The position numbers were made by a program, and so were the translations under genes. Shown in pieces: positions 1,696 to 62,588 of a stretch of 64,000 nt of DNA (its first letter is position 1; every line of letters begins with the position of its first letter). Under the pieces are notes generated by a model, which saw only the letters and a program-made list of their open reading frames with translations, had not been told where the DNA came from and did not search any database. The stretch is from Octopus sinensis (lineage: Eukaryota), in contig NC_043018.1 in assembly GCF_006345805.1 (NCBI RefSeq), positions 13,392,001 through 13,456,000 of the forward strand. Reading direction: 5' to 3'.

Positions 1696-2005
1696 TTATA
1701 ATATATATACTATATATATATATAATTAAGATTCAGTTGAATTAGGTACTTAAACTGAGGCACCTCATTTCGTCAGAATAAGACACACACACAACAATAT
1801 TATGTAAATATTTAAGTTGGTACATAAGTACCGGCCGAATGATATTCTTGCAGTGTATGTGAGCAATTAGACTCAGCTGAGTGAAGAAATCTGTTCTTCA
1901 GCTATTCCGGCATGTACGACATATGGTCTGTAATATTTATGAAGGATGGATTCTGAGACAGGTGAATAAAATATAAATGAGTAACAGTAGAGGTACAGGT
2001 GTCAA

Positions 2006-2090
2006 TCCATTACGGCCGTTTCTAACGACTCCTTTAATTGATTAATGAAAACATTGCAACATTGTATAGGAACCGTTTTCGTCAGATGAA
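2006..2090 (-). ncRNA. Type I hammerhead motif in the left arm of foldback 1982-2250
   Basis: Reverse-complement copy of 2142-2226 with the same core. Confidence 0.68.
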
Positions 2091-2141
2091 TTCATGAACT
2101 TCCAAATAAAGGACATTCAAAATGATTTTGAAGTTCATGAA

Positions 2142-2226
2142 TTCATCTGACGAAAACGGTTTCTTTACAATGTTGCAATGTTTTCATTAATCAATTAAAG
2201 GAGTCGTTAGAAACGGCCGTAATGGA
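2142..2226 (+). ncRNA. Type I hammerhead motif in the right arm of foldback 1982-2250
   Basis: TTCAT-CTGACGA-A-AACGGTTTCTTTA...TAAAGGAGTCGTT-A-GAAA-CGGCCG-TA^ATGGA. Confidence 0.7.
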
Positions 2227-2683
2227 TTGGCACCTGTACCTCTACTGTTATATATATATATATATATATATATAAAAGGAAATGAAGAAAATGCTGACAA
2301 ATAATTGAAGTAATTTAAGTAATTTAATTAGGTGAAAGTTCTTTTTACCGGTTGCGCATTTGTTATGCTTATCAAAATATAAAAGAGAGATTAGAGTTCC
2401 TTTCTTATAGAATATATATATATATAATGATAGATAGAGAAAAAGATAGACAAGTGCATTCATACATACGTACATACTACACACACACACACACACACAC
2501 ACACAATATTTATGAATATATAAACATATATTTATTTCTCGCTGGATAGAGTACTTGTTGATACGACTAATAATGAAACTATCTATATTCAATACAATTA
2601 GTTAATCTGAGCGAGAAGGAGCGAGGTCTGTGTAAGAAGCCTATAAATGTTTAAGTCTCACGAAACTGGATCAAACTGTTCGA

Positions 2684-2730
<47 letters not shown>

Positions 2731-2833
2731 CAACAACATATATATAAATACATGCGTTCATTCATATATACTTGTACATAGATGAAAAAAAAATATATAT
2801 TTATCAAAAGAAAAACAGGATGCAAAGGATTTA

Positions 2834-2920
2834 GCGGTACATATGTTTCTGACTTTATTGGATAATTTATATCAATGCATAATTGATGTAACATGTATGT
2901 CAATAGCCTTCCTCGGCCGC
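2834..2920 (-). ncRNA. Hammerhead family H1 copy with a core mutation (CCGAGGA)
   Basis: Inverted copy of 3151-3237 with a U4C change; probably impaired. Confidence 0.55.
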
Positions 2921-3150
2921 GTACAATTACCACACCAAAGACATGTATTACATTATAGCAGGTCTGAGAAGAAGTTTGGGAAAAAGACGAGTTTCGTTGG
3001 TGAAAAAACGGTATGGACGTCTTGTTTTGGTGTCTCGCTATGCCATATACGACTATGAGGATTTGCATTCCCAACGAAACTCGTCTTCTTCCCAAACGTC
3101 TTCTCAAACCTGCTATAATGTAATACATGTCTTTGGTGTGGTAATTGTAC

Positions 3151-3237
3151 GCGGCTGAGGAAGGCTATTGACATACATGTTACATCAATTATGCATTGAT
3201 ATAAATTGTCCAATAAAGCCAGAAACATATGTACCGC
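3151..3237 (+). ncRNA. Type I hammerhead motif, family H1
   Basis: GCGG-CTGAGGA-A-GGC-TATTG...CAATA-AA-GCC-A-GAAA-CATATG-TA^CCGC. Confidence 0.78.
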
Positions 3238-5460
3238 TAAATCCTTTGCATCCTGTTTTTCTTTTGATAAATATACCCTATCACCTACACCACTAACTGG
3301 CATATACAGGTGCTTACAGTTATCAAGAATTCACCCTGAATTTTTCTACCTAACTTATATATATATATATATATACTCTCTCTCTTTCTTTTACTCTTTT
3401 ACTCTTTTACTTGTTTCAGTCACTTGACTGCGGCCATGCTGGGGCACCGCCTTTAGTCGAGCAAATGGACCCCGGGACTTATTCTTTGTAAGCCCAGTAC
3501 TTATTCTATCGGTCTCTTTTGCCGAACCGCTAAGTGACGGGGACGTAAACACACCAGCATCGGTTGTCAAGCAATGCTAGGGGGACAAACACACACACAC
3601 AAACACACACATACACATACATATATATACATATATACAACAGGCTTCTTTCAGTTTCCGTCTACCAAATCCACTCACAAGGCATTGGTCGGCCCGGGGC
3701 TATAGCAGAAGACACTTGCCCAAGATGCCACGCAGTGGGACTGAACCCGGAACCATGTGGTTGGTTAGCAAGCTACTTACCACACACACACATTATATAT
3801 ATAGAGAGAGAATTTACGAAAGAAACAAAAGACGAAGACAGGTGATGTACAAAACAAACAGATGCATTAGTATAACGCTCAGGAATAGAAAAAGTCTTTT
3901 ACGTTTCGTGCCTATGCTCTTCCACAGAAAGGGACACAGAAAGAAACAAGGAGAGAAAAAAATGTGTGTAGTGGCTAACGATCTATCATGGCGAATATAT
4001 ATATATACACACACGCACACACAAATATATATTTATACATACATAAACACACGCACACACACACATACATATATAAGAGGTTGGGGTAATGTAAAAGAGG
4101 CACCGAATCTTGAAAAATGTCTTAGTTTCTGTCTGCTTTTCGTTTTAAGAAATGAAATCGGATTATTTTAGAGTTAATGTAACATTAAAAGCATTTTGTC
4201 CAGATATTTGTCCTCTAAATGGTCGATATTTCTTGTAACTGAAGTCAAAGAGGAAGTTTTCAAGCGGTACTTGATCTGCTAGAAATAGCAGTCAAATTAT
4301 CCCCAAGTCTCGTCGTACCGTCTTTACATGAAATATACACATTTGTTAATGTTGTGAGTAAGCCATCCACCACTATGAAGAAAATTGACAGTGTTGGTTA
4401 GGATCGAAATACCTTTGATTAGTTTGCTTGATCAGGATGACTGAGGTTAAATTACAACAAAAGCAACAACTTCAAAAATAGTCTACAGACATCTACAATA
4501 ACGACGTGTGTGTCGTTGTGTCTATTGCCGAAACGCCAAGTTACCTGGACGCAACTTGTCAAGCGGTAGAGGGGGGGGGGGGTAAATATATACAGTATCA
4601 GGCTTTAAAAAGTACTAGGGTCGAATTATTCGACGATAAATTCCTTAAAGCGGTGCCCCAACATGGCCACAGTCTAATGACTGAAACAAGTAGAAGAAAG
4701 AATAACAATAGCAGCAACAACAACAGGTTAGCAGTGTTAGTTTGAAACAAATCTATTGCCCCGGGCTCGTACGCGGAGCCAGATTTAGCAATGGTCGAAC
4801 CCCAAAAGAGAGAATTATGTAAGAGGTCATACTCTATTTAGCAATTGTTAACATGCTCCAGCATGGCCACAGTGTAACGACTGAAACAAGTTAAAAAATA
4901 AAAGAATACGAGGAAAATAAGGCAATCTTATTTCCATAAAAAAAAATAACGAAATCTGTTTAAAAAGAGGCAGTTTTCATTTGTTAACGTTAAATGTTAC
5001 CAAATTATGTTAATTAAAGAAAATATGAATCATTATTTAATTATAGATCATATGAAAGTTGTTACAAATAAAAAAGAAAATAATATGAGATTTTGAGCGG
5101 TGCCTTTCGTATAGTTGAAATCCCAAGTTGTAGCTTTTATTTAAATTCACGCAGGTCTTTAGATGTAGCTTATACCTAAATCCAATCTTTATGGCACGGT
5201 GAGAAACAATCTATTGTCACGAGAGAGACCAAAAGAAAATATAAGCTGGACATAGAAGTATGGAGAAAGGAAGCAAAATGAAAGATCTTACTTACTCTCT
5301 CTTTCGTTGTGAAATATAATGTATTGGTAAAGTTCAGATAAGTTGCAATAGCCAGGGATATGAAGCGATAAGAACAATAGGTGCGAAACGAGTAAGGTGG
5401 TGATAACCTAGAAATGAGATTAGCAACTTCTAGCATAGAGACAAGGACACCAAATAGAGG

Positions 5461-8177: not shown

Positions 8178-8642
8178 CTCAATCGATATAAACGTATCTT
8201 CTCAATCGATATAAACGTATCTGTCAAGACCTACCAAAAACTGAGCAAATATAAAGATCTTGAAATAGAAATCAGCAAAATGTGGAACCTGAAGACTAAA
8301 ACAATACCTGTTGTCATAGGTGCCCTGGGAATGGCAGCAAAAGGGGCTGATTGCTACCTAACTCAGATACCAGGAAACCCCAAAATGGCAGAAATTCAAA
8401 AGGTTGTGCTCATGGGAACTGCTCATATCCTATGCAAAATACTTTCTATGTAATCTCAAGTATTAAAACAAGCATAATTTTCATATGTTTTTTTTAGACA
8501 TTCACTAGTACAACACTAAATACAAAACCAAATATATGGCACACTAGGCATAACAACAACATGAACTTCCAACCTGTTGTCTCTTGAGGTCTCTGGGTGA
8601 AACTTGGAGCCAACTTGTACAAATATAAAGCAAAAGTCAAAC

Positions 8643-8645
<3 letters not shown>
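8177..8645 (+). mobile_element. R4/Dong family B 3' fragment
   Basis: SIDINVSVKTYQKLSKYKDLEIE...ILSM plus 3' UTR, between two (TAA)n tracts; 23-bp tandem duplication at the 5' junction. Confidence 0.85.
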
Positions 8646-8685
<40 letters not shown>

Positions 8686-9044
8686 GATAACGATAACAAC
8701 AACAACAACAACAATAATAATAATAAATGCCCTGATCATGGCTTCTGATCTTAACTGATTGGAAGTGTTATCATGTGCATTGTTTTGTATTGGTATAAAA
8801 GATGGGCTACAGCAAATATTCTGCTCAATACCGTAGATTTGCTGGTCAGTTGTTTGACCTTAACCAGTTGAGCATGTCCCTTGGTGGCTGACAATATGTG
8901 CATTTCTGATCACGAGCAGAAGTAGTGGGGGAGCATCATAGCCGTGTGTTGAGAGGGATTCTTAGAGGTTTGGATAATTCACCTTTGGAAACATGGGTGT
9001 TTCGTTCAACGTCCCTAAACAATCCTTATTCAAGGACCTTTTGA

Positions 9045-9130
9045 GCGGTACATATGTTTCTGACTTTATTGGACAATTATATCAATGCATAATTGATGAA
9101 ACATGTATGTCAATAGCCTTCCTCAGCCGC
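9045..9130 (-). ncRNA. Hammerhead family H1 copy, intact core, in sense to CHS downstream of its stop
   Basis: Minus strand GCGG-CTGAGGA-AGGC...AATAAAGTCA-GAAA-CATATG-TA^CCGC; predicted cut between 9049 and 9048. Confidence 0.75.
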
Positions 9131-9325
9131 GTACAATTACACACAGGGCCCCACCTGCAGGGTCATGTGCTGTTTATCTTGATATGAGATCACCATGTCG
9201 CGCACATATGGTCGTGATGCATGTGCATGGTGTACCCTTATCAGACAGGTAGTCATGATGGGTATTTGGGGCTTCGTATATTTTACCCCAGTGTCACTTT
9301 GATGGCGTGCACTGCTCTCTCGCTC

Positions 9326-9377
<52 letters not shown>

Positions 9378-9644
9378 TAATAATAATTATTATTATTATT
9401 ATGTTTTTTCCTTCTTCAAATTTTCTTCCGTTTCTCGCCGAGTGTTTTCCATACACCGAGGGCAGAGAAGGGCATTGTATGCATTCCCAGATTACACACG
9501 CAAATTCACAGATAAAATATGTATTTAAAAATTAATAAATAAATAAATTCATGGATGGATGTTATTTTCACAGCGATATTGCTCTTCTCAGTACATGAGC
9601 TGTTCCAGTTAACACGATTTTTTGCACTTCCTGTAGGGATGGTA

Positions 9645-9690
<46 letters not shown>

Positions 9691-10071
9691 TGTAGCTGTA
9701 TTAATATTAGAGTTAATTGCACTTCACCGAAAACTATGTCTTAGGTTCAGTTGTGCCACAGAATCAGAAATGATAAGCATTAATTCTTCTCCATACCCTT
9801 GGACTGCATTTAGACCTGAAAAGTCAGATATTTTCAAATGCTAGAATATTTAAATGAAATTGCAAGAGACGTCAAAAGCTACAACCGAGATTCAACACTT
9901 TCCTAACACATACACACACACACACACGTGCGTGAGTGTGTATACATGTATATATATATATATATATATATGTAGGTTTGTGTTCGTTTGTACGTGTGTA
10001 TGTCTGTGTGTGTCAATTTTGATGCCTAAGTATCTAGTACATATTGATACAGATATTGGAAACGTTTTATG

Positions 10072-10112
<41 letters not shown>

Positions 10113-10519
10113 TATAATATATATATATAAATATATGTATATATAAAAGAACATAACTTAAGTACCTATTCAATTATATATATATATATATACGCACGTG
10201 CGTGTGTGTGTAGGAAGTGGTTGTAGGATAGTGAAAGTATTAAAGAATTCTAATTTGAAGAATCCATTAATTGAATACGTGTGCTTTTTTCACAGGTGTA
10301 AAAGATGTGGCACAAATAACATATCACTATCTGACTGGATTCTGCACATGCACCAGTTGATATCATGTCAGCGTCCCGTATGCCTGTTTCCTCAAGGGAG
10401 TCAATTAAACAGAAGCCAGGGAACTGCACCAGCCGATTGTATCGACTGTGCACGCTCCCCACTTTTTTCCTGTTCATAAGAGAGATATGTACCTGCTAAA
10501 ATAAAACCTTCAGTTACTT

Positions 10520-36157
<25,638 letters not shown>

Positions 36158-37154: not shown

Positions 37155-39983
37155 CACTAGTTTTATTTTTATAACGTGCTTTCACTTCACTACCGAGCGC
37201 AGCTCTGTGTGCCTTGGGTATGTGCTGTGATTTGTTGTGATGCTCTGATGGTTATTGTATGGAAAGTGTTCTGCGTAGGATGTATGCAGTGCCTAGTAGT
37301 GCAATTTTCTGTATGTTATATGTGTTTGTAAGTCCTGGTGTTTTTGTTATGTATTTGTCTGAATATTTTTTTATCATGCCTAATGCACCTACTATGATAG
37401 GAATTGTTTCTGTTTTTAGATTCCACATTCTGGTTACCTCCATTTCCAGGTCTTTGTATTTTGAAAGTTTCTCCATTTCTTTTGGAGAAACATTGTCATC
37501 TGCTGGTATTGATACATCAATTAGAAAGCATTTTCTTTTTCTTCATGATCTCTGACAACTATATTTGGTCTGTTGGCCTTAATTTCTCTATCTGTGTGTA
37601 TCGGCATATCCCAGAGTATGGTTGCTTTCTCGTTTTCTGTGACCTTTTCTGGTGTGTGCCTATACCATCTTTTTTCTGTTGTTATTCCATAATGTTGGCA
37701 TAACTTCCAGTGTATGTAGGTTCCAACTCTGTCATGTCTGTGAATATATTCCTTCTTAGCCAGGACTGGGCAGCCAGAGATAATATGATTTATTGTTTCT
37801 TGTCCATCTCCACATATTCTGCAGTTACTTGTTATATTTCTTTTCATTACATGATTTTGGTAATTTCTGGTGGGGAAGCTTTGGTCTTGTGCTGCAATTA
37901 AAAATCCCCCTGTCTCTGCTTTGAGTCCTGAGCTTCTCAACCATTGCTGGGATTTTTCTTTGTCTATTTCTTTTGCATTTAGTTTAGTCCAGAATTTACC
38001 GTGAAGGGGTTTTTCTTGCCATCGTTTTATCATGGTTCTTTGCTGTTCTAGTTTTAGTTTGGATTTCATTTGTTTTATAGCTTTTGTTGTTTCTTCTTCT
38101 TCTTCTTCTCTTCTTCTTTCTTCTTTTTCTTCTTCTTTCTTCTTCTCTTTTCTTCTTCTTCTTCTCTTCTTCTTCTTTCTTCTTCTTCTTCTTCTTCTTC
38201 TTCTCTTCTTCTTTTCTTTATATTTGTTAGGTGGTATGATTTCTTGTTTGTATTTGTCAGCTTCCTTAAATACTGAGAACAGTTTTGTTTTGCTCGTGTT
38301 TTGCCGCTATTTGTATCAGTTTCCTTCCTTCTGAAGTAGATATTTTTGCAGTCCTATGGTGGTTATTTTATAGTAGTTTTCCAGCTGTATAAGGCCTCTA
38401 CCACCTTCTATACGTTGTATATATAGTCTTTCTATGTCAGATTTTGGGTGATGCATCTAGACCCTGTCATTATTTTTCTATTTTGGTCAGTTCATTAGTG
38501 TCCAGTTAAGGATATTGTAGCTGTAACTTATAACTGGGACAGCTAAAGTGTTAATACCTATTATCTTTTTTTAGCATTGAGCTCTGTTTTTAGTATTGAT
38601 CTAACTCGTCTATAATATTCTTTTTTTATTTTTCATTTGTTTTTTGTGTGTAGTGTCTTATCTAGTTCATGGATTCCTAAGTATTTGTAAGTTTGGCTTT
38701 GGTCTAATTCTTTTATTTCATTGGTTTTATCTAGTGTGATGTTGCTACTCTTAACTAGTTTCCTCCTCTTTTCATGGTTACTTTGGCGCATTTTTCTAAT
38801 CAAAATTTCATATCTATTTCTTTGGTAAATCCATGAACTGTCTTTAATAGTGTTTCCAGCTGTTTGTCATTTGCAGCGTATAGTTTTAGGTCATCCATAT
38901 AAAAGGTGGCTGATCGTTTTGCCGGCCGTAACATTTATATCCGCATCCAGTTCTATTTAGCATATCAGATAGAGGTGACAGTGCCAAGCAGAAAAGGAGT
39001 GGAGAGAGCGTGTCTCCCTGGAATATTCCTCTTCTAATGTGGATGGCTTTGGTTTTCATGAGTCCCTCTTTTGTTTGGAGCTGTGTAGCATGTTTGCCAT
39101 TTATTCATAGAGTGCCCAATGAATTTTATAATTGTTGGTGCTACTTTGTTAATGGCTAGTGTTTCGAGGATCCATGTGTGGGGGATGCTATCAAACGCCT
39201 TTTTGTAGTCGATCCAGGCCATACTGAGGCCTTTCTTCTTTCTGTGGCTGTCTTCAGTTATGGCTTTATTGATCATTAGTTGATCTTTACAGCCGTATGA
39301 GCCTTTGCGGCATCCTTTCTGCTCTTCTGGAAACAGGTTGTTTTCCAGGTGCTTGTTCAACCTTTGCGATATCACTGCAGTAAATGCCTTGTACATCGTA
39401 GGGAGACAGGTTATTGGTCTGTAGTTTTCTGGTTTTGCTGTCTCATTTGATTGGGAATTAGATGGTTTTCCCCTTCGTGAGCCATTCATGCATTGTTTCT
39501 GGCTCTGCTAGTATGTTGTTAAAATTTTCAGCCAGCTTTTTGTGCATTCCTGTTAGATATTTCAACCAGAAGTTGGGGATCTTGTCATGCCCGGTGCCTT
39601 CCAGTTGCTTAGTCTTTGCAGTGCTGGGTTCCCTCTTCAGTTGTTATGGGGGTCCAAAGTTGCTCAGATGCTGAGTTTGTTATTTTAATACTCCTTTTTT
39701 TTGGTTGTTCGTTCCGACCATATTTCTCTCCAGAATTCTTCCACTTCTTCTGCCGTTGGTGCTGCAGTGATTTCTATTTATTTTTGCCAAGTTCTTGGTA
39801 GAACTTTTTGGGGTTGGAGTTGAACTTTTTGTTTTGTTCAAAGAAGCGCTGGCGTTTCTCGTACCGGCGGATCCTTTGTGCTTTGGCAAGGATATCTTGC
39901 TTTAGCTTTTCTTTTATCTCAGGTAAATTTTTTTGTGTGATGTTGTATTTGCGGAGTATTTTTGTTTTCTTTTTGTTGCTCAG
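37155..39983 (-). mobile_element. 5'-truncated R4/Dong-clade (RLE-type) non-LTR retrotransposon, family A, frameshifted
   Basis: Pre-RT KAQRIRRYEKR..QNKKF; RT PENYRPITCL..EEQKG..WIDYKKAFDS and YMDDLKL near 38900; CCHC CRICG..HIISGC; C-terminal KYKDL..GALG; flanked by (TAA)n. Confidence 0.88.
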
Positions 39984-40086
39984 TATTATTATTATTATCA
40001 TTATTATTATTATTATTATTATTGTTGTTGTTGTTGTTGTTGTTGTTGTTATTATTATCATCATCATTATTATTATTATTATTATT

Positions 40087-40939
40087 CTATGTTTGACTTT
40101 TGCTTTATGTCTGTACAAGTTGGCTCCAAGTCCCACCCAGAGACCTCAAGAGACAACAGGTTGGAAGTTCTGTGCCATATATTTGGGTTTTTTTTTTTTT
40201 TGGTGTTGTACTAGTGAATGTCTAATACATAAAAATAAAAAAAAAAAAATAAATTTTTAAAAAAATTAAAAAATAAAAAAAAAATTAAAATAAATAAACA
40301 AAAAAGTTTGTTTTAAACCTTGGAATTACATAGAGAGTATTTTGCGTAGGATAATACTTGGGATTACATAGAGAGTATTTTGCGTAGGATATGAGCAGTT
40401 CCCATGAGCACTATCTTTTGAATTTCTGCCATTTTGGGGTTTCCTGGTATCTGAGTTAGGTAGCAATCAGTCCCTTTCGCTATCATTCCCAGGGCACCTA
40501 TGACAACAGGTATTGTTTTAGTCTTCAGCTTCCACATTTTGCTGATTTCTATTTCAAGATCTTTATACTTGCTCAGTTTTTGGTAGGTCTTGACAGATAC
40601 GTTTATATCGATTGGGACAGTCATATCAATGAGGAGGCATGTTCTTTGTCTGAAGTCTTTCAATATAATGTCTGGCCTATTTGCATCTATCTTCCTGTCA
40701 GTTTGAATGGTGAAGTTCCAGAGGAGTGAGATGTGGTCATTTTCAAGCACAGGAGGTGGATTGTGTTCCCACCAGTTTTTTTCATGGGGTAAATCCAGGT
40801 TTTTGCAAATTACCCAGTGAATATATTGTGCAGCTCTATCATGCCTACTGAGGTACTCTGTAGGCGCTAGAAGACTGCATTTGGAGACAACATGGTCAAT
40901 GGTTTCATTTTGTTGTCGGCATACACGACATGTTGGGCT
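40087..40939 (-). mobile_element. R4/Dong-clade element 3' fragment, family B
   Basis: CRVC..H....C knuckle, RPDIILKD..LIDMTVP (PD..D nuclease), KYKDLEIE, 3' UTR; (TAA)n on both sides. Confidence 0.85.
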
Positions 40940-40962
40940 TATTATTATTATTATTATTATTA

Positions 40963-40999
<37 letters not shown>

Positions 41000-41767: not shown

Positions 41768-41807
41768 ATCAAATGAAATAAATGAAAAACAGGACACAAA
41801 GGATGTT

Positions 41808-41900
41808 GCGGTACATATGTTTCGGGCTTTATAGAACACCTTATTCTTACATCAATGCATAATCGACATAACAGATAGTTCAAAAGCCTTCTTCAGCCGC
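41808..41900 (-). ncRNA. Hammerhead family H1, diverged copy
   Basis: Minus strand GCGG-CTGAAGA-A-GGCTTT-T-GAAC...GTTC-TAT-AAAGCC-C-GAAA-CATATG-TA^CCGC. Confidence 0.75.
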
Positions 41901-42548
41901 GTGCAATTGCTACACCAAAGACTTGTATCACATTATAAAAGGTTTGAGAAAAAAACATTTGGTATTGTTCATAATGGTAGGTAAATCGAGTATCATTGGG
42001 AAAGTATGATTGTAAATCTTCATAGGCGTACATGGTATTATTAGACTCCAAAACAAATCGTCCATACCGTTTTTTCTATTTCGAGTGAAAATAAGTAAAT
42101 ATTTACTTATTTAAATGCTTTTTCCTGAATAATTTACCAGATATTCAGTAGTTTATGCTTTATTTATTTGTATATTTTCTCTCAGAAATTTGCTTTCCAT
42201 TTCATTGTAACCTCATCTACAATTCTTACCTCAAGAAAATTTCTTGTTATGTCTAAGGAATATTTGTTGGTATAAATGATAGTATTATAGCATCCTTCGG
42301 GGTGTGGAGCAGTTAAAAAAACAATATGGATTTTACATATAGAGAGAACTGGTCTCTGAGTTTTCTTGAATTTTTGTCCATTCCCAGTGAATTAAAAATT
42401 CTTGACAAAGCCGGTGTATATTAAAGCAATAACATCTCCATACAGGTTACTCTGTCGTCTGCTGAAAGCGACGCCATAAGACTAAACTCCTTATGAGCGA
42501 GAAACCCAGGGTAAGCCCATAAACAGGCCTACCCCAATATTATATATA

Positions 42549-44538: not shown

Positions 44539-44638
44539 NNNNNNNNNNNNNNNNNNNNNNNNNNNNNNNNNNNNNNNNNNNNNNNNNNNNNNNNNNNNNN
44601 NNNNNNNNNNNNNNNNNNNNNNNNNNNNNNNNNNNNNN
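44539..44638. other. Assembly gap (100 N)
   Basis: Run of exactly 100 N. Confidence 1.
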
Positions 44639-56168: not shown

Positions 56169-56219
56169 AGCTTCTACAGGACTAGAACTGTTTCATTCAA
56201 GAGAAATCTTCAGGAAGCT
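56169..56219 (-). ncRNA. Compact type I hammerhead motif (inverted copy of 59191-59241)
   Basis: Reverse complement with the same core. Confidence 0.72.
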
Positions 56220-56365
56220 AGTTACAAGAATTGTATTGGCATTTATCCTTTAGGCAGGTTTAAAGGGGTGTTGGTGGGGGACTTTTTTGGGGGTAGGCAT
56301 AGCGCAAAAAATCATACTTGGGGGAGTGGTCAAGGGGTCAGTTTAAATTAGATAGGAGAAAAAAT

Positions 56366-56410
<45 letters not shown>

Positions 56411-56739
56411 TAAAAATAAAAAATATAAATATAAAAATAAAAAATAAAATAAAAATAAAAAATAGAAAATAAAAAATATAAAAACTATAAAAAATAAAAA
56501 ATAAAAATAAAAATAAAAAAATTTAAACAACTCCCAAATTGTATGCATAAGAAGTATGCGAACTACAAGAACTATAGACCTACCCGGCAACCATTGATGA
56601 ACCCCCCCACCCACAAACCCCCCCAATCCCACCACCGTCCCCCTAGCACCCCCGATTACCTTTTCTCCTAAGACCTTTCACATATTGTATGTGCACGCTT
56701 GTAGATGTGTATCGTATATATGTATAGAAATGTATGGGT

Positions 56740-58880: not shown

Positions 58881-58898
<18 letters not shown>

Positions 58899-59190
58899 TT
58901 TATTTTTTATTTTAAATTTTTTTATTTTTATTTTTTTATTTTTTTATTTTTTATATTTTTTATTTTCTATTTTTTATTTTTATTCTTTATTTTTTATATT
59001 TTATATTTTTTATTTTTTATTTTTTATTTTTTATTTTTTTTTTTTCTTCTCCTATCTAATTTAACACTGACCCCTTGACCACTCCCCCAAGTATGATTTT
59101 TTGCGCTATGCCTACCCCCAAAAAAGTCTCCCACCAACACCCCTTTAAACCTGCCTAAATGTATAAATGCCAATACAATTCTTGTTAACT

Positions 59191-59241
59191 AGCTTCCTGA
59201 AGATTTCTCTTGAATGAAACAGTTCTAGTCCTGTAGAAGCT
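59191..59241 (+). ncRNA. Compact type I hammerhead motif
   Basis: AGCTTC-CTGAAGA-T-TTC-TCTT-GAA-T-GAAA-CAG-TTCTAGTC-CTG-TA^GAAGCT: 6-bp stem I, 4-bp stem III, GUA triplet. Confidence 0.75.
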
Positions 59242-61296: not shown

Positions 61297-61552
61297 GTAA
61301 AAATAATTACAGACATGGACAGAACATGAAAACACCCACAGAGACGACACAAGAACACAGGACGGGACATTCGAAGCCCTCAGTCATCAGTCAAGAACCA
61401 GATCATCTTAGCAATTTCGGCTGAATACACATACATATTAGCAGGAAGACGGCCTTCTGGGCGGTTTTCTGTTAGCCACTTGATAATATTTTCCCATTTG
61501 ATTTCCAATTCTAATAATTCTTATAGTGTTTGCCGCCGTTGTGCCTTTGCTG

Positions 61553-62588
61553 CTAAATATGAACCATTTTGTTGCACAATGCATCTCCACCTTTCCTTTA
61601 ACTTGAAAAATACCCTCTTCCCAGAATTGAAGTGGTTTCATGGCAAAGAATTCATCAAGGTATCTTTTTACGTCATCCAAGGAATTGAAATTTTTACCAT
61701 TAAGACTATTCTGCAGAGACCTGAATAAGTGGAAATCCGAAGGAGCAATATCTGGTGAATACGGAGGGTGGGGTAACACATCCCAGCCAAGCTGCAGCAA
61801 TTTTTGTCAGGTTCCCAAAGAAACATGCGGTCTTGCATTATCTTGTTGGAAAACAACATCCTTCCTATTGGCCAATTCTGGACGTTTCTCTTGAATTGCT
61901 GCTTCTAACTCGTTCAGTTGTGTGCAGTATTTCTCAGAATTAATTGTCTGATTACTTGGGAGAAGCTCATAGTACAGAATTCCTTTCCAATCCCACCAGA
62001 TACAAAGCAAGACTTTTTAGGATGAAGACCTGCTTTTGGGGTGGCTAAGGGTGGCTCATGTCGCTTACTCCAGGATCGCTTTCCCTGAACATTTCGGATT
62101 TTGAACGACGGATTTTGATAGGTTGAGGCTTTCTATCAATTCTCGGGTTGTACAATGTGGGTTATTCTCAATTAATGACTTGATTTGGTCATCATCTGTA
62201 GTGGATGGTCTGCCTGATCGCTCTTTATCAATAAAGCTACAATCTCCAGCTCGGAACCTTGCGGACCACTTCCATACAGTTCTTTCGGGTAAAGAAACAT
62301 CACCGTAAACTGCACATATTTCTTTGGTTGCTTGTGAGGCATTTTTTCTCTTTTCAGATAAAGAAAAGCATCACGCACTGAAAATGAACTTTCTTATCTT
62401 CCATTTTAAAGGGTTAGAAAATGAACACAGGTTATAGGAACATAAACCTTCTTCCACGAAAAGATAGCTTAAACTGTGCTCTGAATGGAGGTGTAGTCAA
62501 ATCCTATTTTATGGACTCAACCGTGTTCTAAAATAAGTCGAAAGGTAAGCTCCTATAAATCGGCATGAACTTTCCGGACAACCCAATA
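61553..62588 (-). mobile_element. Mariner element (mellifera-subfamily-like), disrupted, one TIR
   Basis: ATG at 62404 MEDKKVHF; LCIWWDWKG, QQDNARPH, LGWDVLPHPPYSPDIAPSDFHLF; TIR ends at 62588. Confidence 0.9.

What the first reader, a model, noticed from the sequence alone, without database searches (positions are those of the whole stretch)
9045..9130. Sense-strand hammerhead downstream of CHS contains the first canonical poly(A) signal after the stop
Seen: I found no AATAAA or ATTAAA on the minus strand between the CHS stop (10520) and 9131. The first AATAAA is at 9070-9065, inside stem II of an intact H1 hammerhead, about 16 nt upstream of its predicted cut (9049/9048). Inference: the CHS 3' end may be formed within this element, with polyadenylation and self-cleavage competing at nearly the same position. 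This would resemble known 3' UTR hammerheads in mammalian genes. It may be coincidence, because the AATAAA is part of the H1 family sequence and variant signals could be used upstream.
Basis: partly seen in the sequence, partly recalled or inferred. Interest (0 to 1): 0.72.

Follow-up and report, generated by a model that had tools for sequence, protein, structure and literature searches.

The report
Retroelement hammerhead fragment downstream of chitin synthase
About 1.45 kb downstream of an octopus chitin synthase gene lies a broken copy of a small mobile element that carries a hammerhead-ribozyme-like motif and, inside it, an AATAAA; the sequence facts are right, but nothing shows the gene uses it, so it is most likely an ordinary transposon remnant.

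Summary
On the minus strand there is no AATAAA or ATTAAA between the chitin synthase (CHS) stop at 10520-10522 and 9131. The first AATAAA (9070-9065) lies in the 3' strand of helix II of a hammerhead-like motif (9130-9045), 16 nt before the predicted cut.

The motif belongs to a 104-nt copy (9041-9144) of a ~285-nt repeat, H1. This copy is 5'-truncated and lacks the 38-nt 3' tail. H1 shows the insertion pattern of Penelope-like-element (PLE) or retrozyme-type retroelements.

All core nucleotides are intact. However, positions 10.1/11.1 are an A-A mismatch, helix II is 59 nt long, and no Rfam hammerhead model matches. In this copy the hammerhead fold is 2.8 kcal/mol less stable than a competing fold.

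The AATAAA is family sequence, present in 3 of 4 copies in the window. A stretch of at least 1450 nt without a canonical hexamer follows 30% of minus-strand positions, so the gap is unremarkable. Octopus 3' UTRs have a median of about 350-380 nt.

No transcript data could be reached, so use as a poly(A) site or as a ribozyme is untested. The copy is also present in the O. vulgaris reference genome. This is a new member of a known kind, of low to moderate interest.

The parts
9041..9144 (-). H1 copy 'c9041m': a 5'-truncated, tail-less fragment matching positions 137-241 of the ~285-nt H1 unit
   Evidence: BLAST and nhmmer against the other copies, 95% identity to the young copies; alignments A1 and A3
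9045..9130 (-). Hammerhead-like motif (type I topology). Helix I is 9130-9127 paired with 9048-9045; core CUGAGGA is 9126-9120; helix II region is 9119-9061; GAAA is 9060-9057; helix III is C9056-G9051 with loop AUAU; U16.1 is 9050 and A17 is 9049; predicted cut is 9049/9048
   Evidence: Sequence; descriptor scans; constrained folding
9065..9070 (-). AATAAA hexamer in the 3' strand of helix II; the first canonical poly(A) hexamer after the CHS stop
   Evidence: four of its six bases pair in the helix II fold of the young copy
9005..9043 (-). Non-H1 flank holding a CA dinucleotide (9043-9042, 22-23 nt after the hexamer), an AAUAAG variant (9030-9025) and a GU/U-rich stretch (GAUUGUUUAGGGACGUUG). 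It could serve as a downstream element if the hexamer is used
   Evidence: Sequence inspection only; function is inferred
10520..11839 (-). CHS terminal open frame, with its stop codon at 10520-10522
   Evidence: One search gives 31-38% identity to chitin synthases over the transmembrane part and 100% to O. vulgaris P0001
3001..3275 (+). Full-length H1 copy; its hammerhead-like motif is 3151-3237 and its 38-nt tail is 3238-3275
   Evidence: The free minimum-energy fold equals the hammerhead fold
2796..3000 (-). Inverted 5'-truncated H1 copy, head-to-head with the full copy. Its motif is 2834-2920 and its core is mutated to CCGAGGA (U4 to C)
   Evidence: 205-nt inverted repeat, 97% complementary; alignments
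41780..42076 (-). Older solo full-length H1 copy (74-76% identity). Its motif is 41808-41900 with core CUGAAGA and TATAAA in place of AATAAA. It abuts (CA)n(TA)n
1971..2261 (.). Second family, H2: a head-to-head inverted pair with arms 1971-2107 and 2125-2261. Hammerhead-like motifs are at 2004-2092 (-) and 2140-2228 (+). ATTAAA ends 22 nt before the cut. The pair abuts (TA)n

Best explanation
The feature is a dead-end fragment of a small non-autonomous retroelement (H1, unit about 285 nt). The unit carries, near its 3' end, a hammerhead-ribozyme-like motif of the kind found in Penelope-like elements (PLEs) and metazoan non-LTR retrozymes.

In the element's own life cycle the motif presumably helps process or present the element RNA for the PLE-type reverse transcriptase. 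This step is inferred from the literature, not shown here.

The copy at 9041-9144 inserted in sense orientation about 1.4 kb downstream of the chitin synthase stop codon. It lost its 5' 136 nt and lacks the optional 38-nt tail.

Its AATAAA is simply part of the A/U-rich 3' strand of helix II that the family carries. At this locus the copy is most likely a passive transposon remnant. At best it offers a distal, alternative poly(A) signal for transcripts that read this far. Self-cleavage by this solo copy is probably negligible.
For: Repeat identity:
- There are four H1 copies in the window; c9041m is 95% identical to the young ones.

Retroelement signature of the PLE type:
- A full copy at 3001-3275 is joined head-to-head to an inverted 5'-truncated copy at 2796-3000.
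- A solo single-arm copy at 41780-42076 shows that the unit is the arm, not the palindrome.
- 5' truncation is seen, and the 38-nt 3' tail is present in three copies and absent in c9041m.
- The flanks are (TA)n/(CA)n microsatellites.
- These are the features described for PLE insertions (PMC8557442; PMC11167929).

Hammerhead-like motif:
- All core positions are intact in c9041m. N7 is the only core position that varies between copies (G or A), apart from a U4-to-C change in one copy.
- Helix I is 4 bp, and helix III is 2 bp plus a palindromic tetraloop, as in invertebrate and PLE hammerheads (PMC4209133; PMC7229834).
- The free minimum-energy fold equals the three-helix hammerhead fold in two copies.
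- A second, unrelated family (H2) has the same architecture but entirely different helix I and II sequences.
- There are 5 descriptor hits against 0.003 expected.

Passive status at this locus:
- The hexamer is family sequence.
- The hexamer-free gap is unremarkable, P=0.30.
- The hammerhead fold of c9041m is -10.4 kcal/mol against -13.2 for a competing fold that sequesters the core.
- Single PLE hammerheads were inactive in vitro.
Against: - No PLE reverse transcriptase or GIY-YIG gene was found or looked for in the window, so the link to PLEs rests on insertion anatomy and literature.
- No Rfam hammerhead model matches, the 10.1/11.1 pair is A-A, and helix II is 59 nt, so ribozyme activity of any family member is unproven.
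- Only 4 H1 and 2 H2 copies were available, so covariation support is thin.
- The poly(A) context of the hexamer is reasonable: UGUA twice 60-75 nt upstream, CA 22-23 nt downstream, then a GU-rich stretch.
- The copy is retained, with the hexamer and core unchanged, in a second genome that differs by 1.5%. Use as a poly(A) site is therefore not excluded.
- Some invertebrate retrozyme hammerheads with a 2-bp helix III do cleave well as monomers.
Confidence: 0.6

Rival explanations
1. TE-derived poly(A) signal. CHS transcripts run about 1.45 kb past the stop and are cleaved and polyadenylated 10-30 nt after the H1 AAUAAA, as the main or a distal alternative site. The hammerhead-like fold plays no catalytic role and at most modulates access to the hexamer.
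For: - It is the first canonical hexamer after the stop in both genomes, at 1450 nt and 1528 nt.
- UGUA motifs lie upstream, with CA and a GU-rich stretch downstream.
- In the most stable fold of this copy the hexamer is unpaired.
- Retroelements are known to donate poly(A) signals to 3' UTRs (PMC2553571, PMC11699766).
Against: - The hexamer-free gap has a 30% chance expectation.
- Many variant hexamers lie upstream.
- The median octopus 3' UTR is 350-380 nt.
- No transcript evidence was found.
Confidence: 0.2
2. The copy is both an active self-cleaving hammerhead and the CHS poly(A) signal, and the two reactions compete at nearly the same phosphodiester, tuning CHS mRNA output.
For: - The core is intact and the cut site lies 16 nt after the AAUAAA.
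- Four of the six hexamer bases pair in helix II when the hammerhead fold forms, so the fold and hexamer recognition would be mutually exclusive.
- Both H1 and H2 carry a canonical hexamer 16-22 nt before the cut. The per-family chance is 0.077 and 0.048.
Against: - It requires two unproven activities at once.
- This is a solo copy with an A-A at 10.1/11.1, a G-U-weakened helix II and a more stable competing fold.
- PLE-type hammerheads are weak or inactive as single motifs.
- All objections to poly(A) use also apply.
Confidence: 0.05
3. The hammerhead resemblance is fortuitous. H1 and H2 are foldback or MITE-like DNA elements whose long inverted repeats happen to contain CUGANGA and GAAA boxes.
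For: - Two of the three loci are near-perfect palindromes.
- No Rfam hammerhead hit was found.
- A loose descriptor gives 0.73 hits per shuffled window.
Against: - The strict descriptor gives 0.003 expected against 5 observed.
- Two unrelated families share the whole architecture, with different helices.
- Solo single-arm and 5'-truncated copies exist.
- One arm of the H1 palindrome is a 5'-truncated version of the other, which is the PLE pattern rather than symmetric terminal inverted repeats.
Confidence: 0.07
4. Terminator aid. The motif cleaves read-through CHS transcripts downstream of an upstream, non-canonical poly(A) site and gives an entry point for 5'-3' exonuclease, as was proposed for co-transcriptional cleavage elements.
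For: Only position and orientation: it is in sense and downstream of the stop.
Against: The activity objections are the same as above, and there is no conservation evidence beyond two genomes that are 1.5% apart.
Confidence: 0.03

Closest known systems
Minimal hammerhead motifs of Penelope-like elements (Cervera & de la Pena 2014, PMC4209133)
   Same: Type I topology; short helix I (4 bp); an unpaired base after A9; a helix II longer than canonical; a palindromic 15.2-16.2 pair plus loop 3; location near the 3' end of a repeat that inserts as 5'-truncated, tandem or inverted copies. Pairs of motifs on opposite strands 100-700 bp apart were reported there too.
   Different: The G10.1-C11.1 pair, described as highly conserved, is A-A here (A-C in the oldest copy). 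Helix II is about 59 nt with internal loops rather than 6-8 bp. No PLE ORF is linked in this window, and the carrier is a ~285-nt non-coding unit.
Metazoan non-LTR retrozymes with type I hammerheads (Cervera & de la Pena 2020, PMC7229834)
   Same: Unit size (170-400 nt), low GC and non-coding. Helix III is 2 bp plus a tetraloop, as in invertebrate motifs. A non-Watson-Crick pair at the base of helix II has a precedent (U-U in axolotl HHR_Amex2).
   Different: Retrozymes are head-to-tail tandem repeats expressed as circular RNAs. Here the copies are solo or head-to-head inverted. No loop 1/loop 2 tertiary contacts are recognisable, and expression is unknown.
Discontinuous hammerheads in mammalian Clec2 3' UTRs (Martick et al. 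2008, as summarised in PMC2950038 and PMC6765202)
   Same: A sense-strand hammerhead motif downstream of a stop codon that could affect mRNA 3' end integrity.
   Different: In Clec2 the cut lies between the stop and the poly(A) signal, the two halves are hundreds of nt apart, the motif is conserved across mammals, and it lowers reporter expression by 80%. Here the AAUAAA is inside helix II and upstream of the cut, the motif is contiguous and transposon-borne, and nothing is known about its effect.
Transposon-donated poly(A) signals (Lee, Ji & Tian 2008, PMC2553571; dog SINEs, PMC11699766)
   Same: A sense-oriented retroelement brings a canonical AATAAA into the region downstream of a stop codon.
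   Different: In those cases use is documented by transcript ends. Here there are none.

Membership tests
Hammerhead ribozyme (type I) | Conserved core: C3 U4 G5 A6 N7 G8 A9, G12 A13 A14, A15.1-U16.1, H17 | tested here: met
   CUGAGGA ... GAAA C AUAU G U A | C at 9126-9048. The same core is present in 3 of 4 H1 copies and both H2 copies; c2830m has U4 to C.
Hammerhead ribozyme (type I) | Three helices around the core | tested here: met
   Helix I is GCGG/CCGC, helix III is A-U and C-G with loop AUAU, and helix II is GGC/GUC plus UAUUG/CAAUA and an inner hairpin. The free minimum-energy fold gives this three-way junction in c3136p and c41808m, but not in c9041m (-10.4 against -13.2 kcal/mol).
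Hammerhead ribozyme (type I) | G10.1-C11.1 (Watson-Crick) pair closing helix II | tested here: not met
   A9119 opposite A9061. It is A-A in the young H1 copies and both H2 copies, and A-C in c41808m, where an alternative register gives G-C.
Hammerhead ribozyme (type I) | Match to curated covariance models (Rfam hammerhead families) | tested here: not met
   No hit at gathering score over the whole window. No hammerhead hit at E<=10 in 8500-11000 or 1900-3400.
Hammerhead ribozyme (type I) | Loop 1-loop 2 tertiary contacts and measurable self-cleavage | not testable with these tools
   This needs in vitro transcription with core mutants. Helix I is open and only 4 bp, so no loop 1 can be defined.
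PLE-associated / retrozyme-type hammerhead element | Motif sits near the 3' end of a repeat that shows 5' truncation, an adjacent inverted 5'-truncated copy, an optional 30-40 nt tail and microsatellite targets | tested here: met
   compared with PMC8557442 and PMC11167929. The tail is 38 nt (3238-3275) and is absent from c9041m.
PLE-associated / retrozyme-type hammerhead element | Palindromic helix III/loop 3 that allows dimeric hammerheads | tested here: met
   ACAUAUGU (H1) and ACGGCCGU (H2) are palindromes. The predicted 8-bp duplex is -9.0 kcal/mol.
PLE-associated / retrozyme-type hammerhead element | Linked or co-resident PLE reverse transcriptase/GIY-YIG gene, or head-to-tail tandem repeats | not tested
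   No tandem H1/H2 copies occur in the window. The only RT examined, at 39037-39507 (-), matches the general Pfam reverse-transcriptase family RVT_1, which does not show whether it is of the PLE type. A genome-wide search was not possible.
mRNA 3' UTR hammerhead (Clec2 type) | Cut site lies between the stop codon and the poly(A) signal; discontinuous halves; conserved at orthologous loci across distant species | tested here: not met
   AAUAAA is upstream of the cut and inside helix II, and the motif is contiguous. Presence is shown only in a second genome that differs by 1.5%.
Transposon-derived poly(A) site | Transcript ends with untemplated poly(A) 10-30 nt downstream of the hexamer | not testable with these tools
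   No transcript contigs could be reached. Public FLAM-seq and Iso-Seq data exist (PMC9699675, PMC10700109).

The most novel reading that the evidence does not exclude
Both octopus families place a canonical poly(A) hexamer in the 3' strand of helix II: AAUAAA in H1, ending 16 nt before the hammerhead cut, and AUUAAA in H2, ending 22 nt before it. The 3' module of these retroelements might therefore be a dual 3'-end-forming device in which ribozyme folding and CPSF recognition are mutually exclusive and act on the same site. Sense copies landing downstream of genes, such as this one behind CHS, would then import a switchable 3' end.
Probability: 0.06. Interest if true: 0.7.

Novelty: new member of a known kind. 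Interest (0 to 1): 0.25.

Why it matters
If the remnant reading is right, the finding is an ordinary transposon fragment. Its main value is as a pointer: octopus genomes carry at least two families of short retroelements with hammerhead-like motifs of a slightly unusual build (A-A at 10.1/11.1, helix II of about 56-66 nt). Two full-text searches of the held library, 'hammerhead ribozyme' with 'octopus' and 'cephalopod' within PMC7229834, found no description of octopus or cephalopod hammerheads.

If the hexamer were shown to be the CHS poly(A) signal, it would be one more case of a transposon donating a 3' end.

Only the combined case would be of wider interest for RNA processing: an active ribozyme and a poly(A) site at the same position, recurrent across family copies.

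Tried and rejected
1. Rfam scans, at gathering score over the whole window and at E<=10 over two sub-regions, gave no hammerhead match. The hits were microsatellite or palindrome-driven miRNA look-alikes.
2. To gather more H1 copies, I searched the protein database with the open antisense frame of H1. No candidates were found.
3. To find orthologous loci or transcripts, I searched with two CHS exon translations. Both returned only O. vulgaris reference proteins P0001 and P0008.
4. Exact-ORF look-ups for a 3' UTR ORF and for the ORF spanning the H1 copy found nothing on record.
5. A scan of the metagenome collection with a 31-base H1 motif pattern gave 0 matches.
6. I considered the idea that H1/H2 are MITEs with terminal inverted repeats. 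I rejected it because one arm is a 5'-truncated copy of the other and because solo arms exist.
7. I first assumed that a 2-bp helix III makes any solo copy inactive. I softened this after reading that invertebrate retrozyme hammerheads of that build cleave well as monomers.
8. I first assumed L001 was the same sequence as the window. It is not: substitutions are 1.5% and there are many microsatellite indels. It therefore served as a second genome.
9. I did not build a covariance model, because only the window and L001 could have been searched, and BLAST, nhmmer and the descriptor scans had already exhausted them.

Full report
**Observation.** The minus strand of 9300-8900 reads GCGG-CUGAGGA-A-GGC...GUC-A-GAAA-C-AUAU-G-U-A|CCGC between 9130 and 9045. 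The CHS terminal open frame is 10523-11839 (-), with its stop at 10520-10522. The gene is a chitin synthase. Pfam Chitin_synth_2 matches exon 16254-16796 (-), and ChitinSynthase_IV_N matches 30451-31476 (-). The transmembrane part of the last exon is 31-38% identical to annotated chitin synthases. A direct count finds no AATAAA or ATTAAA on the minus strand between 10520 and 9131. The first AATAAA is at 9070-9065, 16 nt before the predicted cut at 9049/9048.

**The motif is part of a repeat family.** Self-comparison of the window finds four copies:
- 9041-9144 (-);
- 3136-3241 (+);
- 2830-2935 (-);
- 41808-41908 (-), an older copy at 76% identity.

The full unit is about 285 nt (3001-3275 +; 41780-42076 -). 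At 2796-3275, a full copy is joined head-to-head to an inverted, 5'-truncated copy. This forms a 205-nt inverted repeat that is 97% complementary. The older copy is a solo single arm next to (CA)n(TA)n. The copy downstream of CHS corresponds to unit positions 137-241. It lacks the 5' 136 nt and the 38-nt tail that follows the motif in the other three copies.

These features are the ones described for Penelope-like elements (PMC8557442; PMC11167929): 5' truncation, an adjacent inverted 5'-truncated copy, an optional 30-40 nt tail, and microsatellite targets. Hammerhead motifs near the 3' end of such repeats, sometimes as pairs on opposite strands 100-700 bp apart, were reported by Cervera and de la Pena (PMC4209133).

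**Is it a hammerhead?** Evidence for:
- All core nucleotides are present in the CHS-proximal copy.
- Apart from a U4-to-C change in the inverted truncated copy, the only core position that varies between copies is N7, which is free to vary (G or A).
- Helix I is 4 bp.
- Helix III is A-U plus C-G closed by the palindromic loop AUAU, which is the invertebrate/PLE build.
- In two copies the unconstrained minimum-energy fold is exactly the three-helix junction.
- A second, unrelated family (H2) has the same layout with completely different helices. Its motifs are at 2004-2092 (-) and 2140-2228 (+), within inverted arms 1971-2107 and 2125-2261, next to (TA)n. It has core CUGACGA, a 7-bp helix I, a 12-bp helix II and loop GGCC.
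- A strict descriptor finds 5 sites against 0.003 expected per shuffled window.

Evidence against:
- No Rfam hammerhead model matches, even at E<=10.
- The base of helix II is an A-A mismatch instead of the G10.1-C11.1 pair that the PLE study called highly conserved. A U-U mismatch at that place does exist in axolotl retrozyme hammerheads.
- Helix II is 59 nt with internal loops.
- Activity is unknown for every copy.

For the CHS-proximal copy specifically, a C-to-U change turns GGC/GCC into GGC/GUC. The hammerhead fold (-10.4 kcal/mol) then loses to a fold that sequesters the core (-13.2). The whole 116-nt region folds no better than shuffles (z = +1.05).

**The poly(A) argument.** The AATAAA is family sequence. 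It is present in the three young copies and is TATAAA in the old one. In the hammerhead fold, four of its six bases pair in helix II. In the more stable alternative fold of this copy it is unpaired. Its context is acceptable for a poly(A) site:
- UGUA occurs twice, 60-75 nt upstream.
- CA lies 22-23 nt downstream.
- A GU-rich stretch follows in the non-H1 flank.

However, the hexamer-free stretch is not informative. 30% of minus-strand positions in this window are at least 1450 nt from the next canonical hexamer. At least ten single-base variants of the hexamer lie between the stop and the element. FLAM-seq put the median O. vulgaris 3' UTR at 350-380 nt (PMC9699675).

**Ribozyme activity in the literature.**
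- Single PLE hammerheads showed no detectable cleavage in vitro.
- The Anolis PLE hammerhead needed the element's protein and left no RNA-seq ends at its cut site.
- On the other hand, coral and mussel retrozyme hammerheads with a 2-bp helix III do cleave as monomers.

I therefore rate activity of this solo, weakened copy as unlikely but not excluded.

**A second genome.** The only related locus that could be fetched was L001, from O. vulgaris GCA_951406725.2. It is not identical to the window, showing 1.5% substitutions and many microsatellite indels. The H1 copy is present there at the same place, with the same core, hexamer and flanks. It differs only by a 10-nt duplication inside helix II. 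The absence of any canonical hexamer between the stop and the element also holds there, over 1528 nt. The insertion is thus older than the split between these two genomes. This says little about function at 1.5% divergence.

**Comparison with known systems.** The element works like, and most probably is, a PLE/retrozyme-type hammerhead-bearing non-autonomous retroelement. Two defining features fail: the G10.1-C11.1 pair and a match to curated models. Linkage to a PLE gene could not be tested. I therefore file it as a new member with an unusual helix II, not as a proven ribozyme.

The analogy with the Clec2 3' UTR hammerheads fails on anatomy. In Clec2 the cut lies between the stop and the poly(A) signal, the ribozyme is discontinuous, and it is conserved across mammals. 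Transposon-donated poly(A) signals are well documented, and that is the most plausible functional reading if any applies.

**One thing worth following.** H1 and H2 both carry a canonical hexamer ending 16-22 nt before the hammerhead cut. The per-family chance from shuffled helix II is 0.077 and 0.048. With two families and a post hoc test this is only a hint. A genome-wide comparison with FLAM-seq cleavage clusters would settle it.

**Verdict.** The most likely reading is a transposon remnant (0.6), followed by a transposon-donated distal poly(A) signal (0.2). The competition model is at about 0.05.

Noticed in passing
window 1971-2261: A second hammerhead-like family (H2). It is a head-to-head inverted pair with 137-nt arms (94% complementary, 17 nt apart), next to (TA)n. 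Motifs are at 2004-2092 (-) and 2140-2228 (+), with core CUGACGA, a 7-bp helix I, a 12-bp helix II and loop GGCC. It has the same A...A flanks of helix II as H1.
   Followed up: partly
window 9070-9065 (H1) and 2194-2199 (H2, + strand): Both families carry a canonical poly(A) hexamer in the 3' strand of helix II, ending 16 nt (AAUAAA) and 22 nt (AUUAAA) before the predicted cut. Shuffled helix II gives this in 7.7% and 4.8% of trials.
   Followed up: partly
L001 12133-12250 versus window 9041-9144: The window is not the same sequence as the O. vulgaris reference GCA_951406725.2. It shows 1.5% substitutions and many microsatellite indels. The orthologous H1 copy there has a 10-nt duplication (ATTGATATAA) inside helix II.
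   Followed up: yes
window 2834-2920 (-) and L001 18379-18484: The inverted 5'-truncated H1 copy has the core mutated to CCGAGGA (U4 to C) in both genomes, so the change predates their split.
   Followed up: yes
window 2055-2177: There are sub-threshold Rfam plant-miRNA look-alike hits (MIR7504 at 75.9 bits against gathering 83; MIR7993 at 75.8). They are caused by the long hairpin that the H2 inverted pair would form. The H1 pair gives weaker ones at 2955-3115. Such palindromes could yield hairpin RNAs if transcribed.
   Followed up: no
window 12744-13059; L001 7460-8485: A 15-nt minisatellite (CATTTTACGCAGTGC, 21 copies) lies in the last CHS intron. The reference annotation calls a 341-residue protein on the opposite strand across it, which looks spurious.
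   Followed up: no
window 10520-11209 and 14985-21209 (-): In the reference annotation the chitin synthase is split. The tail of the last exon is a separate 229-aa 'hypothetical protein' (P0001), and a 302-aa product (P0008) covers exons further upstream.
   Followed up: partly
window 37255-40999 (-) and 61441-62370 (-): Other transposon remnants are present: a reverse-transcriptase element (RVT_1, zf-RVT) just upstream of the CHS 5' exons, and a Mos1/mariner-like transposase fragment (HTH_48).
   Followed up: partly
window 56190-56213 (-) and 59197-59220 (+): Two identical CTGAAGA...GAAAC strings lie on opposite strands, beside low-complexity inverted repeats (56343-56525 and 58882-59064). 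They matched only the loose core pattern, not the hammerhead descriptors.
   Followed up: no
window 44539-44638: A run of 100 N, which is an assembly gap.
   Followed up: no
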